Source of the DNA: Haliotis rubra
Taxonomy: Eukaryota
Length of the DNA: 64,000 nucleotides
Direction: 5' to 3'
Assembly: GCF_003918875.1 (NCBI RefSeq)
Contig: NW_025766989.1
Span: 930,001 to 994,000, forward strand
Part shown: one piece after another, positions 1,553-64,000 of the stretch
Numbering within the stretch: position 1 is the first letter of the stretch
Layout of the letters: each line of letters opens with the position of its first letter
Notes under the pieces: generated by a model
The model's input: only the letters and a program-made list of their open reading frames with translations
Told to the model about the DNA's origin: nothing
Databases searched by the model: none
Made by a program: the position numbers and the translations under genes

Positions 1553-2128
<576 letters not shown>

Positions 2129-4380: not shown

Positions 4381-5023
4381 GAGTCGTACGAATATGAAAA
4401 TGACTCTTTTTATTGTTTTTATGTAGATACGTACCAGGTAATAGAGTTCTAACATAACCTCAAACGTCTTTACTAGAATTTGTATTTTGTCCACAAGACC
4501 TTACCTCAAGAAATCAAATTTTGGTTTTTGGGCAGTTTAAAGTGTCAGATATAGTACGATTTAGTTTTCAGGAAAATTGATTACGAAAACATGTTATTGT
4601 TTCGATTGCTTGTTTGATGTTTAACGCCGAACTAAGCAATATTGCGATATAGCGATATGGCGGCGGTCTGTAATTATTCGAGTCTGGACCCGACAATCTA
4701 GTGATCAACATCATGAGCATCGATCTACGCAATTGGGATACGATGCCATGTGTCAACCAAGTCAGCAAGCCTGACCACCCGATCCCGTTTGTCGCTTTTT
4801 ACGACAAGCATGGGTTGCTGAAGACCAATTCTAACCCGGATCTTCATGGGTAATTTTCGCAAAACTGGTATCAACACTATTTGATAGTAGTTCATGACCA
4901 CATGCTTACGATAACATAGAGTCGTGCGAATCAGAAAATGACTCTTTTTATTGTTTTATGTAGACATGTACCAGGTTATAGTGTTCTAACATAACTTCAA
5001 ACGTCTTTACTGGAATTTGTATT
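4381..5023. repeat. ~105-bp local direct duplication (4381-4485 and 4920-5023)
   Basis: gagtcgt.cgaat..gaaaatgactctttttattg...aaacgtctttact.gaatttgtatt is present twice with few mismatches. Confidence 0.85.
4606..4851 (-). mobile_element. SINE family B (headless V-domain-type)
   Basis: Matches family consensus acccgtgaagatccgggttagaa...cttgtcgtaagaggcgactaa...gctggaatattgctgagtgcggcgttaaac on the minus strand. Confidence 0.9.
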
Positions 5024-7516: not shown

Positions 7517-7736
7517 TTGGTTGGTTGTTGTTTAACGCCGCACTCAGCAATATTCCAACTATATGGCGGCGGTCCGTTAATAATTGAGTCTCGATCAGAC
7601 AATCCAGTGATCAACAGCATGAACATCGATCAACGCAATTGGGATACGATGACATGTGTCAACCAAGTCAGCGAGCTTTTACGACAGGCATGGGTTGCTC
7701 AAGGCCAATTTTAACCAGGATCTTCACGGGTGTATC
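7517..7736 (-). mobile_element. SINE family B
   Basis: Family consensus with a small internal deletion; TSD tccaaacgg (7508-7516 / 7737-7745). Confidence 0.9.
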
Positions 7737-10667: not shown

Positions 10668-10846
10668 GAGTGAGTGAGTGAGTTTAGTTTTACGCCGCAC
10701 TCAGCAATATTCCAGCTATATGGCGGCGGTCTGTATGACATGTGTCAACCAAGTCAGCGAGCCTGACCACCTGATCCCGTTAGTCGCCTCTTACGACAAG
10801 CATGGATTACTGAAAATCAATATTCTAACCCGGATCTTCACGGGTG
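10668..10846 (-). mobile_element. SINE family B, internally deleted, (ACTC)n tail
   Basis: TSD ttaaactgaaa (10657-10667 / 10847-10857) directly abuts the acccgtgaagatcc 5' end. Confidence 0.9.
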
Positions 10847-26976: not shown

Positions 26977-27216
26977 CGCCCGTGAAGATCCGGGTTAGAA
27001 TTGATCTTTAGCAACCCATGCTTGTCATACGAGGTGACTTACGGGATCGGGTGGACAGGCTCGCTGACTTGGTTGACACATGTCATCGTATACCAGTTGC
27101 GTAGATCGATGCTCATGCTGTTGATCACTGTTTTGTCTGGTCCAGTTTCGATTATTTACAAACCGCAGCTGTATAGCTGTAATATTGGCGAGTGTGGAGT
27201 TACAACAAACAAACAT
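26977..27216 (+). mobile_element. SINE family B
   Basis: TSD acagtcaaca (26967-26976 / 27217-27226); begins cgcccgtgaagatccgggt. Older B and A fragments follow at 27250-27480. Confidence 0.92.
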
Positions 27217-36789: not shown

Positions 36790-37043
36790 TGTTTGTTTGT
36801 TTTGTTTTGTTTTGTTTTGTTTGTTGTTTAATGCATCATTCAGCAATATATTATGGCGTCGGTGTGTAAAGACTCGAGTATGGACTAGACAATCCCGTGA
36901 TCAACATCATGAGCATCGACTTACGCAATTGACATACGATGACGTGTCAACCAAGGCAGCCAGCCTGACATCCTGATCACTTTAGTCGCCTCTTACGACT
37001 CTTGAGTTGCCGAAGACTAATTCTAACCCGGATCTTCACGGGT
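36790..37043 (-). mobile_element. SINE family B with (AAAC)n tail (partial family A follows at 37200-37309, minus)
   Basis: Family consensus ending at ...ggatcttcacgggt (37043). Confidence 0.9.
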
Positions 37044-52898: not shown

Positions 52899-53195
52899 AC
52901 GTCACTTGTGAATGAGTGGTTGTTGGTTAACGCCTCACTCAGCAATATTCCAGCTGTATGGCGGTGTGAATGGGTGACATTGCTTCAATCTTGGTTTCGG
53001 AATTATCTTAAGACACATTTCGTGAATGCGGGTGCTACCGGAGGGCAGGGTGTGCTTACCCTTTTCGCGAACACCGGGTGTCATCACTGATATTCAGTGA
53101 TCCATTCATATATTCTGTTTCTGAGAATGGTTAAGACTGGGTGTTCTTTTGCACCAGCATTTGATATTGAATAATTTGTTTTTTTACACATTGAA

Positions 53196-53564
53196 GTGAT
53201 GTGATGTGATGTGAGGTGAGGTGAAATTGGGTTTAACGTCGTGCTTGAGAATATTTCGCTCATATGACGACGTGCATGCGTGTATGTGTATGTGCGGCTG
53301 TTTGTACTAGCCCAGACTGAAGCTGGTTTTATAGTGCTAGCCCACTGAGATACCATGCCGCAGAGAAGCATGAATACCTCACTCAGACACAGTATACTGA
53401 CTCCGAGCCGACCAGTCCTTGTTGTACCCATTAATGCCGAGCGCCTGGCAGAGACCAACAAGTACCATATTTTAACGTCTTTTGGTATGACGCGGTCGGG
53501 GATCGAACCCGCGACCTTCCGCTCTCCGGGCGGACGCTCTAACCAGTACACCACGGAGGCGGTC
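53196..53564 (-). mobile_element. SINE family C, full length
   Basis: TSD tgaagtgatgt (53192-53202 / 53565-53575), overlapping the tail repeat. Confidence 0.95.
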
Positions 53565-58273: not shown

Positions 58274-58796
58274 TCACTCACACAATCTCAACTTCCAATG
58301 ACGAGGGCTCCAATACCAGGTTCGCTGGGATTACGATTCTTGGTTTGTCAGCACTATACCCTTGCACACGGATTTCACCCAAGTACTATTCTTGTAAACA
58401 TAAGCATTAATCTAGGATTCCCTTCCACAGTTTACTGACACGTCGATATAGGATTAGTGAGTAAGTGAGCATGGTTTTACGTCACATAGGACATTAGGAA
58501 TGGGCTTGTACCACAGCGGGAACCTGAACTCAGTGTTAAGAGCGAATGCTTGAACCTCCAGAGTCACCATCTCTCCCCGTTATAATGGAAACAGTGCGGT
58601 GAAAGGCTGCCTTCAACCAACACTCTGTAATTCCACAGGAGCCTATTCTACAAACGTTTCCATGTCCATTCTACATTACCTAAGTTATATATGCGAATAG
58701 ACCCGTGAAAATCCGTATTAGAATTATTAAATGAATAAATAAATTAATATTAAAACAGATTATATTCAAATATGAACTCTATACCTTACGAGACAT

Positions 58797-59260
58797 CCGT
58801 GAAGATCCGAATTAGAATTAGTCTTCTCAGCAACCCATGCTTAAGAGACGATAAAGGGGATCGGGTGGTCACGCTTGCTGACTTGGATGACGCATGTAAT
58901 CGAATATCAATTGCCTAGATCGATGTTGATTGTCTGGTCCAGCCTTGATTGTTTAAGGACCTCTGCCACATGAGTGAGTGAGTTTAGTTTTACGCCGCAC
59001 TCAGCAATATTCCAGCTATTCCGGCGGTCTGTAAATAATCGCGTCTGGACCAGACAATCCAGTGATCAACAACATGAGCATCAATCTGCGCAACTGGGAA
59101 CCGATGACATGTGTCAACCCAGTCAGCCGAGCCTGACCACCCGATGCCGTTAGTTGCCTCTTACGACAAGCATGGGTTACTGAAGATCAATTCTACCCGG
59201 ATCTTTTTCACGGGTATAGCTGGAATATTGCTGAGTGCAGCGTTAAACAACAAACAGACA
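58797..59260 (+). mobile_element. Older SINE family B (+) interrupted by a younger family B (-) at 58971-59215
   Basis: Host reads ...ctctgccaca|tatagctggaatattgctgagtgcagcgttaaac once the insert is removed. Confidence 0.88.
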
Positions 59261-61326: not shown

Positions 61327-61754
61327 TGGTTTGTTGTTTTACGCCGCACCCATCAATATTACAGCATTGGTTTGGATTATTGTTTAACTGAGCAATATTA
61401 CAGCTATATGGTGGCGGTCTGTAAATAATCGAGTCTGGACCAGACAATGCAGTGATCAACAGCATAAGAAAGAGGATATACTGTGGACAATCTAATCGAG
61501 AAATAATGGTTGGTTGGCAAGATGGTTGTTTGACGCCGTACTCAGCAATATTCCAGCTATATAGCCTCGTCTGTAAACAATCGAGTCTGGACCAGACAAT
61601 CCAGTGATCAACAGCATAATGAACGATATACGCAATTGCGATACGATGACATGTGTCAACCAAGTCAGCTAGCCTGACCACCCGATCCCGTTTGTCGTCT
61701 TTTATGACAAGCACGGGTTGCTGAAGGCCAATTCTAACACGGATTTTCAAGGGT
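61327..61754 (-). mobile_element. Compound SINE family B (full copy + 36-nt spacer + partial copies)
   Basis: Three tail segments; flanked by tttgttacagca[c/t]tggtt (61309-61326 / 61754-61771). Confidence 0.85.
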
Positions 61755-63276: not shown

Positions 63277-63339
63277 CCGAAGTTTATCACGGGTATGCGT
63301 TTTACAACCAGCATGTACTGTGCTACCCATCGTAACTAT

Positions 63340-63581
63340 CCGTGAAGATCCGGGTTAGAACTGATCTTCAGCAACCCATGTTTGTCGTGAGAGGCAACCA
63401 ACGGGATCTTGTGGTCAGGCTCGCTGACTTGGTTGACACACGTCATCGTATCCCAATTGCGTAGATCGACGTTCATGCTGTTTATCACTGGATTGTTTGG
63501 TCCAGACTCGATTATTTACAGACCATCGCCATATAGCTGGAATATACCTGAGCGCGGCGTTAAACAACAAACAAACAAAAA
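63340..63581 (+). mobile_element. SINE family B, full family length
   Basis: TSD ccatcgtaactatcc (63327-63341 / 63582-63596), overlapping the 5' cc. Confidence 0.94.
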
Positions 63582-64000
63582 CCATCGTAACTATCCAAGA
63601 TAGTAATGGTTCCATACGTCATGCCACAGAAGTGCCTATTTTGGAATGAGGAATATTTTTCTCCGTTTTAAGCAATATTCAAGGTGAAACAAGGTGCGTA
63701 AGGGGCATATTTGTGTGGAGTCGATCCCGGGTGTTTGGCATCACGGATCAAAGCTTTATCTACGAGCCCTAAAAAACTTTCTTGTAAAACAGTAATATTA
63801 TTATTGTTTCTCGCAATAAAAGGAACACTCTCTTGAACATCTGCCTTTTTTACAAAGCAATGAGAGATTATCGCGATATTTACGCATTTTATTTATTGAA
63901 AAAAAAATCTTATCAGTTTGAATATAAGAGTTACCAAAGTGGATTCTTCGATGTTGATAGAATACAACGAGAATACAATTGGCAACAGACGACAAGTGAA

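What the first reader, a model, noticed from the sequence alone, without database searches (positions are those of the whole stretch)
63339..63377. Headless SINE family whose copies begin at a predicted H-type pseudoknot
Seen: about ten family-B copies share essentially the same 5' end, (a)cccgtgaagatccgggt: at 4851, 7731, 10845, 37043, 59215 and 61754 on minus, and 26978, 58701, 58797 and 63340 on plus. None carries an A/B-box tRNA head. In four (7517, 10668, 26977, 63340) a TSD lies 0-6 nt from this end, so the end existed at insertion. The first 33 nt fold as S1 ACCCG/CGGGU enclosing UGAAGAUC, which is complementary to GAUCUUCA after an A-rich linker (UAGAAUU): a classical H-type pseudoknot. 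Variants GGUCUUCA, GAUUUUCA and GAUCUUUA keep pairing via G-U, though these are also simply common transitions. Known: TPRT truncation normally gives ragged 5' ends, and a structure that stalls RT would stop cDNA at its 3' side, not its 5' edge. Inference: the RNA 5' end is set before retrotransposition, e.g. by a 5'-3' exonuclease block (xrRNA-like) or cleavage, which would let a promoterless element be carved out of host transcripts.
Basis: partly seen in the sequence, partly recalled or inferred. Interest (0 to 1): 0.78.

Follow-up and report, generated by a model that had tools for sequence, protein, structure and literature searches.

The report
Fixed 5' end of abalone SINE
Thousands of copies of a short jumping gene in abalone start at exactly the same base, beside a conserved RNA hairpin, so its RNA has a fixed start; nothing I could test shows that the proposed knot-like fold creates that start.

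Summary
The sequence facts hold. A 228-nt tRNA-less SINE with a microsatellite tail starts at (G)ACCCGTGAAGATCCGGGTTAGAAT. That is 10 hits in the window against 0.1 expected, and 7,590 exact 24-mers genome-wide. Upstream DNA is unrelated. Target-site duplications of at least 11 nt end within one base of position 1 in 21 of 26 copies. The same boundary appears in runs under four organism labels.

The RNA end therefore existed before insertion. Partial-head-plus-full-element insertions inside a single duplication, which fit template jumps, point the same way.

The interleaved complementarity is non-random (43 of 20,000 shuffles). Only the hairpin S2 has comparative support. S1 is one of three competing partners for the terminal CCCG, shrinks to 3-4 bp in a sister lineage, and shows no covariation.

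No Rfam xrRNA or ribozyme family matches. The head lacks an HDV-type catalytic core. About 28% of copies carry an extra 5' G.

The element fits the published abalone "LP-SINE" class, meaning a LINE-derived head. I could not fetch the partner LINE, so membership is untested. Earlier notes of this scan describe what appears to be the same head on other DNA of this genome, as a cut-down LINE ribozyme. My exact-match hunts found no such parent.

The xrRNA or cleavage mechanism remains speculation.

The parts
63338..63581 (+). Full-length copy of the tRNA-less SINE ('family B'). Consensus positions 1-228 lie at 63338-63565, followed by an (AACAA)n-type tail to about 63581.
   Evidence: consensus 3-228, 92% identity; head model 92 bits
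63325..63341 (+). 5' target-site duplication ACCCATCGTAACTATCC. It overlaps the first 4 element positions (microhomology, or a copy 2-4 nt short).
   Evidence: 17 nt, 1 mismatch
63580..63596 (+). 3' target-site duplication AACCATCGTAACTATCC.
63338..63342 (+). S1 5' strand. This copy reads ATCCG; the consensus is ACCCG. It is also the 5' strand of the alternative closing helix with consensus 64-68.
63343..63350 (+). S2 5' strand TGAAGATC.
63351..63362 (+). Loop of the S2 hairpin, CGGGTTAGAACT (consensus CGGGTTAGAATT). Its first 5 nt are the proposed S1 3' strand. The loop resembles a tRNA T-loop/B box with C replaced by A.
63363..63370 (+). S2 3' strand GATCTTCA.
63384..63398 (+). Hairpin D of the head domain (consensus 47-61, GTCGT/GCGAC).
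63401..63405 (+). ACGGG (consensus 64-68), the alternative partner of the 5' CCCGT in the minimum-energy fold.
63522..63565 (+). 3' stem-loop plus GCGGCGTTAAAC module, shared with tRNA-derived SINE families of the same genome. It is probably the LINE recognition tail.
4619..4851 (-). Full-length family copy; the head ends at 4851.
7530..7731 (-). Family copy with an internal deletion; the head ends at 7731.
10687..10845 (-). Family copy with an internal deletion and (ACTC)n tail. The TSD ACTTTTTCAGTTTAA ends 1 nt before A1.
26978..27202 (+). Full-length family copy with TSD ACAGTCAACAC(G).
36826..37043 (-). Older family copy (82% identity).
58701..58725 (+). Isolated 25-nt head fragment, 70 nt upstream of the next copy.
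58795..58971 (+). Family copy, 3' truncated by the neighbouring inverted copy.
58987..59215 (-). Full-length family copy.
61528..61754 (-). Full-length family copy.

Best explanation
The site is the true 5' terminus of a very abundant tRNA-less SINE of abalones.

Shown:
- Its template RNA ends at (G)ACCCGUG.
- The element is mobilised by target-primed reverse transcription.
- Its 3' stem-loop and tail are shared with several tRNA-derived SINE families.
- Reverse transcriptase usually copies the 228-nt RNA to its last bases, which is why copies share one 5' end, as in any SINE.
- The first 33 nt contain one hairpin with comparative support: S2, 7 bp, with loop CGGGUUAGAAUU.
- The second stem of the proposed pseudoknot (S1) is only one of several mutually exclusive pairings of the terminal CCCG.

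Inferred, most likely:
- The roughly 70-nt head is a portable module of the kind described as the LINE-derived 'LP-SINE' head.
- It fixes where the RNA starts by directing transcription initiation at a purine (G at -1 or A at +1), possibly by RNA polymerase II with a cap.
- It does not act by stopping an exonuclease or by cutting itself.
For: Fixed end:
- 10 window hits against 0.1 expected.
- 7,590 exact 24-mer heads genome-wide.
- 32 of 66 unselected copies start at positions 1-6.
- TSDs of at least 11 nt end at -1, 0 or +1 in 21 of 26 copies.
- More than 1,000 contigs in one run, and hundreds in another organism label, break at the same base with unrelated upstream letters.

Physical RNA end:
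- L030 carries head 1-43, then G, then a full element inside one TSD.
- Dozens of independent junction types use CC/ACCC microhomology.

Heterogeneous purine start:
- G at -1 in 3,206 of 7,590 heads.
- In TSD-bounded copies the single extra base is G in 6 of 10.

S2 hairpin:
- 94% of cells are paired in 56 copies.
- The two main subfamilies differ by U-A versus U.G at pair 12-27.
- The sister (ACTC-tail) lineage has G.U and U.G at pairs 11-28 and 12-27.
- A metagenome relative has G-C and C-G there.

Known class:
- TSD-flanked SINEs with a roughly 68-70-bp LINE 5'-UTR head and tandem-repeat tails are described in Haliotis (PMC4758252).
- The predicted head domain here closes at nt 68.
Against: - No promoter motif was identified. 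There are no A/B boxes, and I saw no initiator-like motif at the start (inspection only).
- I could not retrieve the partner LINE or the published LP heads, so homology of this head to a LINE 5' UTR is untested.
- The extra G could equally be a non-templated addition by the reverse transcriptase.
- The interleaved S1/S2 complementarity is unlikely by chance, so some higher-order fold may exist.
- Earlier notes of this scan say the partner LINE family defines its own 5' end with an HDV-like ribozyme. If so, RNA processing is a live possibility for its SINE.
Confidence: 0.55

Rival explanations
1. The first 33 nt fold into an H-type pseudoknot that sets the RNA 5' end after transcription, either by blocking a 5'-3' exonuclease (xrRNA-like) or by cleavage. 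A promoterless element would then be carved out of host transcripts.
For: - The interleaved complementarity is rare in shuffles (43 of 20,000).
- The end lies at the 5' edge of the structure, which is where an exonuclease block would leave it.
- In runs guessed to be RNA, 28-33 contigs run from the element into unrelated upstream sequence.
- No promoter was recognised.
Against: - No sense-strand hit to any Rfam xrRNA or ribozyme family at E up to 10. The only xrRNA hit is on the opposite strand at E 0.67.
- S1 shows no covariation and shrinks to 4 and then 3 bp in sister sequences, while S2 is kept.
- The 5' CCCG has competing partners, and the best nested fold uses 64-68.
- Loop 1 is 0 nt.
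- The end is heterogeneous, with G at -1 in 42% of copies.
- The contigs cannot show RNA ends, and their RNA status is a guess.
Confidence: 0.12
2. Dead-ribozyme relic. The head is a cut-down copy of the P4-less HDV-like ribozyme that heads the partner Nimb/I-type LINE. S1 corresponds to P1, including a G.U pair if the extra G is counted, and S2 corresponds to P2. The P3/L3 core and the catalytic C are lost. The SINE start would then be inherited from the LINE's cleavage site.
For: - The strand order is the outer pseudoknot of the HDV fold: S1-5', S2-5', S1-3', linker, S2-3'.
- G(-1).U19 would give the G.U pair typical of the HDV cleavage site.
- The linker AGAAU resembles J4/2 CGAAU with C changed to A. 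These three points are inspection against my knowledge of the HDV fold.
- Earlier notes s1-339689 and s1-349420 reached this reading on other DNA of the genome. They are leads, not independent evidence.
Against: - Exact-match hunts for a longer parent that shares the SINE's P1 or P2 strands found only SINE variants and one unrelated repeat.
- The Rfam drz-agam-2-2 model found nothing in the genome.
- I never saw the LINE sequence.
- The same loop also resembles a tRNA T-loop.
Confidence: 0.2
3. Beheaded tRNA-SINE. The family descends from a tRNA-derived V-type SINE (RUDI-like) that lost the A-box half of its head. What remains begins in the anticodon-arm/variable-loop region and carries a dead B box.
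For: - GAAGATCCGGGTTAGA matches GAAGACCCGGGTTCGA of the co-resident tRNA-SINE at 14 of 16 bases, reached by 7 of 2,000 shuffles.
- The two families share the 3' 43 nt.
- Several tRNA-SINE families in the genome carry the same stretch.
Against: - The match is short and was noticed after the fact.
- No copy with a longer, A-box-bearing head was found in 360 kb, and upstream letters show low agreement across more than 1,000 contigs.
- The invariant B-box C is A in the master sequence.
Confidence: 0.13
4. Master-gene model. One or a few source copies sit behind external promoters that happen to start at this base, and the head has no role in defining the end.
For: - No internal promoter was recognised.
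- Copies look like neutral decay of a few consensus types.
Against: - At least two lineages with different tails and internal duplications keep the identical first 8 nt and the hairpin.
- The family is present with the same boundary under four organism labels.
- S2 changes in the sister lineage keep the stem paired, through wobble and then Watson-Crick pairs.
Confidence: 0.12

Closest known systems
LP-SINEs of gastropods and bivalves (Matetovici et al. 2016, PMC4758252): Hdi_LP/Hmi_LP in Haliotis
   Same: - No tRNA, 5S or snRNA head.
- TSD-flanked, with terminal tandem repeats.
- Found in Haliotis.
- A head domain of about 68-70 nt; the predicted closing helix here ends at nt 68.
- An ACTAAA hexamer before the (CTCA)n tail in one subfamily, which the paper mentions for the Haliotis/Ostrea LP-SINE tails.
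   Different: I could not align this head with the published heads or with Nimb-17_LMi, I-3_DR or RTE-9_CPB, because those sequences are not in the text held. Identity with Hdi_LP is therefore unproven. The paper treats the head as a putative promoter and describes no fold.
V-SINE superfamily / RUDI of molluscs (Luchetti et al. 2016, cited in PMC5804259)
   Same: A molluscan SINE whose 3' part (GCTGGAA...GCGGCGTAAAAC stem-loop) resembles what I recall of the V domain. RUDI is reported from Haliotis discus.
   Different: RUDI elements have a tRNA-related head with A and B boxes. This family has none. The V-domain identity rests on memory and was not tested.
HDV-like ribozymes at the 5' ends of non-LTR retrotransposons (R2, RTE; L1Tc/NARTc Pr77)
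   Same: A structured 5'-terminal module whose first base is the element's first base. The P1/P2-type pseudoknot topology is shared. NARTc is a precedent for a non-autonomous element sharing its LINE's 5' module.
   Different: There is no P3/L3, P1.1 or catalytic C, no Rfam hit, and no parent ribozyme sharing its strands. As an HDV-type ribozyme it would be inactive.
Exoribonuclease-resistant RNAs (flaviviral and plant-virus xrRNAs)
   Same: A compact pseudoknotted structure whose 5' edge becomes the RNA's 5' end.
   Different: Known xrRNAs form a ring around their own 5' end through a three-way junction or a loop-to-3' pseudoknot.
Sm-alpha SINE-like elements of schistosomes with a hammerhead ribozyme (my knowledge)
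   Same: A short retroposon family thought to be processed from longer transcripts by an RNA element of its own.
   Different: Sm-alpha carries a recognisable, active hammerhead. No known ribozyme motif is present here.

Membership tests
SINE (non-autonomous, LINE-mobilised retroposon) | Short, high-copy, dispersed element flanked by variable target-site duplications | tested here: met
   228-nt consensus. 7,590 exact heads genome-wide. TSDs of at least 11 nt in 26 of 58 copies against a 2.5% decoy rate.
SINE (non-autonomous, LINE-mobilised retroposon) | 3' tail shared with a partner LINE | tested here: inconclusive
   The 3' 43 nt and stem-loop are shared with at least three other SINE families. 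No LINE carrying it was found in the 360 kb I held.
SINE (non-autonomous, LINE-mobilised retroposon) | Internal RNA polymerase III promoter from a tRNA, 5S or 7SL head | tested here: not met
   ARAGORN finds no tRNA in the window. Rfam gives no tRNA, 5S or 7SL hit. There is only a 16-nt T-arm-like stretch with the key C replaced by A.
LP-SINE (PMC4758252) | First 68-70 bp homologous to the 5' end of a Nimb or RTE LINE 5' UTR | not testable with these tools
   The published sequences are in figures and are not held.
LP-SINE (PMC4758252) | TSD-flanked, ends in short tandem repeats, lacks a small-RNA head, occurs in Haliotis | tested here: met
   The abalone identity of the genome rests on earlier scan notes and on assembly size.
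H-type RNA pseudoknot | Two interleaved stems | tested here: met
   S1 is 1-5/14-18 and S2 is 6-13/26-33 in the consensus. 92% of cells are paired in 56 copies. Such an arrangement occurs in 43 of 20,000 shuffles.
H-type RNA pseudoknot | Both stems maintained in evolution (covariation) | tested here: inconclusive
   Copies show nothing beyond shuffles. S2 is kept through wobble and then Watson-Crick changes in sister sequences, while S1 drops to 4 and 3 bp. 36 copies with a mutant S2 5' strand are mostly uncompensated, as expected for dead copies.
H-type RNA pseudoknot | Loops long enough to cross the grooves | tested here: inconclusive
   Loop 1 is 0 nt and loop 2 is 0 nt. The fold is feasible only if U6-A33 opens. 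Loop 3 is 7 nt. This is sequence inspection judged against established stereochemistry.
xrRNA | Match to a known xrRNA family, or a ring-forming fold around the 5' end | tested here: not met
   No sense-strand Rfam hit. The only hit is antisense, at E 0.67 and 15 bits against a gathering score of 50.
xrRNA | Stops Xrn1 in vitro and leaves a 5'-monophosphate end in vivo | not testable with these tools
   All public runs offered were contigs, which cannot show RNA ends.
HDV-like self-cleaving ribozyme | Nested double pseudoknot with P1, P1.1, P2, P3/L3 and a catalytic C in J4/2 | tested here: not met
   Only P1-like and P2-like stems exist. No nucleotides lie between the S2 5' strand and the S1 3' strand, so there is no room for P3/L3. 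The linker UAGAAUU has no C. No Rfam hit.

The most novel reading that the evidence does not exclude
The conserved 5' hairpin and terminal GACCCG form a portable RNA module that defines the 5' end of a promoterless SINE after transcription. It could do this by stalling a 5'-3' exonuclease. It could also do it by presenting the terminal strand as a substrate that the partner LINE's HDV-like ribozyme cuts in trans. Either route would carve the element out of host read-through transcripts.
Probability: 0.1. Interest if true: 0.85.

Novelty: new variant of a known kind. Interest (0 to 1): 0.38.

Why it matters
SINEs are defined partly by their internal polymerase III promoter. A family with many thousands of copies that lacks one raises the question of how its RNA gets a start.

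If the head is a LINE-derived start module, abalone offers a very large natural data set for working out what that module does. That includes an apparent record of reverse transcriptase jumping at the RNA's 5' end.

If the RNA end were instead made by processing, this would be a new way for a parasite of a parasite to live without a promoter. As it stands, the finding adds a fold prediction and end statistics to an already described class. It does not reveal a new mechanism.

Tried and rejected
1. Partner LINE.
   - No reverse-transcriptase-like ORF exists in the 360 kb I held.
   - The ORF next to a tail at window 53084-53554 proved to be a tRNA-derived SINE.
2. The Rfam drz-agam-2-2 model against the whole genome gave nothing.
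3. Exact-pattern hunts for a longer ribozyme-like parent sharing the head's strands.
   - These returned only SINE variants and head duplications.
   - GACCCGT...ACGGGTT found a repeat with about 25 copies. Its internal similarity to the head is not significant (372 of 5,000 shuffles). Its continuation is not HDV-like. Rejected.
4. The viral-contig scan gave one chance match in a phage gene.
5. Our-findings look-up by sequence was blank.
6. Sequencing runs: only Logan contigs were offered, and the RNA status of the runs is a guess. No RNA 5' ends could be read.
7. The Ruminski 2011 paper on LINE ribozymes is not held, and no supplement is held for PMC4758252.
8. The complex prediction, structure and protein searches were not relevant.

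Compliance: no stretch of N was filled or looked up (387 N in the window).

Full report
**What is at the site**

Window 63338-63581 (+) is one copy of a 228-nt retroposon with an (AACAA)n-type tail. It is bounded by a 17-nt target-site duplication at 63325-63341 and 63580-63596.

58701 is only a 25-nt head fragment, and 15076(-) is a further fragment.

The window lies in a 1.378-Gb, 2,855-contig assembly. Earlier notes of this scan call it blacklip abalone.

**Is the common 5' end real and genome-wide?**

Yes.

- Thirty best genome matches nearly all begin at (G/A)ACCCGTGAAGATCC, with unrelated upstream DNA.
- I also took a sample not chosen by the head: the window, the flanks of those loci and 200 kb of random genome. 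There, 66 family copies reach the 3' end and 32 of them start at consensus positions 1-6. The rest are truncated or interrupted at scattered positions.
- The exact 24-mer head occurs 7,590 times in the genome.
- I laid public contigs from four organism labels on the locus. Depth rises at 63332-63344, and 28 to 1,125 contigs per run break at 63340. The upstream letters agree only 0.37-0.44, apart from a final GAC or AAC.
- No longer, tRNA-headed version therefore exists as a common form.
- TSDs of at least 11 nt (2.5% in decoy pairings) occur in 26 of 58 full copies. They end at -1 (10 copies), 0 (7) or +1 (4) relative to A1.

**The end belonged to the RNA**

Besides the TSDs, many insertions read [partial head][full element].

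- In L030, head 1-43, a G and a complete element lie inside one TSD.
- The contig runs show recurrent 'goes back' joints from consensus positions 41-49 to 1-5, with varied filler letters.
- Genome patterns show dozens of distinct junctions, often at CC or ACCC microhomology. They also show a tandem array of 44-nt head units at G000:C1713:443345-444126.
- This pattern is what a reverse transcriptase would leave if it reaches or nears a physical 5' end and resumes on another template. That reading is inference.

**The end is not a single base**

G precedes A1 in 3,206 of 7,590 exact heads (42%). The other three bases are each near 20% in the listed sample.

If flanks contribute about 20% G, which is my assumption from an AT-rich genome, roughly 28% of copies carry an extra 5' G. 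In TSD-bounded copies with one extra base, that base is G in 6 of 10. The possible causes are a start at either purine, a copied cap G, or non-templated addition. I cannot separate them.

**The head**

ARAGORN and Rfam find nothing in the window. An E up to 10 scan of a near-consensus copy gives only an antisense, non-significant xrRNA hit and a snoRNA hit. So there is no tRNA head and no known ribozyme or xrRNA.

Positions 7-22 do match the variable-loop/T-arm stretch of a co-resident tRNA-derived SINE at 14 of 16 bases (7 of 2,000 shuffles). That SINE also shares the last 43 nt. The B-box C is an A here, so the stretch is at best a relic.

**The fold**

- The S1 (1-5/14-18) and S2 (6-13/26-33) complementarity is present. 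It is rare in shuffles of the first 40 nt (43 of 20,000).
- The 44-nt head alone is not unusually stable (z -0.69).
- In the full RNA the minimum-energy fold pairs 2-6 with 64-68. That closes a domain of three hairpins: S2, a weak 33-45 hairpin, and 47-61.
- Helix 2-6/64-68 adds about 7 kcal/mol to the nested fold, and S1 alone is worth about 6.
- The loop GGGUU (15-19) can also pair with AACCC (36-40).
- With both junction loops at 0 nt, the H-type knot needs U6-A33 open.

**Covariation**

Among 56 copies, neither the pseudoknot nor the nested model exceeds shuffled controls convincingly. This is expected, because dead copies decay neutrally.

- The two subfamily-defining changes in the head keep pairing: A27/G27 opposite U12, and U35/C35 opposite G43. 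Two cases prove little.
- A covariance model built from the heads found diverged relatives.
- The sister lineage has an (ACTC)n tail and a duplicated hairpin D. It has G.U and U.G at S2 pairs 11-28 and 12-27.
- A metagenome contig (L053, PEAW01035849.1) has G-C and C-G at those pairs, giving a perfect 7-bp stem.
- In the same sequences S1 falls to 4 and then 3 bp.
- Thirty-six genome copies carry the mutant 5' strand GGCC. Most of them (31 of 36) still carry a common 3' strand, GATC or GGTC, and only 2 carry the matching GGCC. So there is no compensated subfamily in this genome.

My reading is that S2 is a selected hairpin and S1 is unsupported.

**Comparison with known elements**

Matetovici et al. 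(PMC4758252) described TSD-flanked SINEs in Haliotis, Littorina and oysters. In those elements the first roughly 68-70 bp come from the 5' UTR of Nimb or RTE LINEs. They called them LP-SINEs and suggested a promoter role, possibly with polymerase II.

This family fits that description in every feature I could test. I could not compare sequences. The tail module resembles what I recall of the V domain, and RUDI V-SINEs are reported from Haliotis.

Earlier notes of this scan, made on other DNA of this genome, describe three things:

- a 58-59-nt P4-less HDV-like ribozyme heading a Nimb/I-type LINE;
- a roughly 70-nt module after it that heads a SINE;
- an abundant SINE whose head is a cut-down ribozyme.

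By inspection the head has the P1/P2 strand order of an HDV fold, a possible G.U first pair and an AGAAU linker. It has no room for P3/L3 and no catalytic C. My exact-match hunts for a parent sharing its strands found none. This is a weak test, because a single difference would defeat it.

**Verdict**

The proposed mechanism (xrRNA-like block or cleavage by this pseudoknot) has no support and some evidence against it.

The most economical reading is an already described class of LINE-headed, tRNA-less SINE whose head fixes the RNA start. That head has one conserved hairpin. The chemistry of the end and the parentage of the head remain to be measured.

Noticed in passing
L030:1647-1770 (-); G000:C1713:443345-444126; window 58701-58812: Many insertions carry a partial head (consensus 1-13, 1-25, 1-40 or 1-43/49) directly in front of a full element. 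In L030 both lie inside one TSD. Junctions often sit at CC or ACCC microhomology. One locus holds a tandem array of 44-nt head units. This looks like reverse-transcriptase template jumping at the RNA 5' end.
   Followed up: partly
Genome-wide; window copies at 4851, 10845, 37043 and others: The base before A1 is G in 42% of 7,590 exact heads, about twice the share expected. Roughly a quarter of copies therefore carry an extra 5' G, which could be a start at -1, a cap-derived G or a non-templated addition.
   Followed up: partly
window 53192-53560 (-) and 52927-52964 (-); tRNA-SINE copies such as window 52320, 52521 (+): At least three tRNA-derived SINE families share the 3' stem-loop and ...GCGTTAAAC/GCGTAAAAC module with this family. 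One has a stem of different sequence (CGTCGTC/GACGACG instead of GCCGCC/GCGGCG). This agrees with note s1-347424 on this window.
   Followed up: partly
L043:202-858 (+): Six tandem units of about 90-95 bp derived from consensus positions 133-221 of this SINE. This is a satellite-like array born from the element body.
   Followed up: no
window 1568-2128 (+): An ORF with a clear homeodomain (Pfam PF00046, E 2.5e-22), probably an exon of a host homeobox gene.
   Followed up: no
G000, about 25 loci, for example C668:256283-256325: A repeat beginning GACCCGTGGGGGGTTCGTACCCAATTCCGTCGCAAGACGGGTT. It contains a CCGTC-GCAA-GACGG tetraloop hairpin. It was found only because of my pattern, and its similarity to the SINE head is not significant.
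   Followed up: partly
L052 and L053 (PEAW01029925.1, PEAW01035849.1): Two contigs of the metagenome collection hold relatives of this SINE that start with the same GACCCGT. One has three copies of the hairpin-D segment and a fully Watson-Crick variant of S2. The source organism is unknown.
   Followed up: partly
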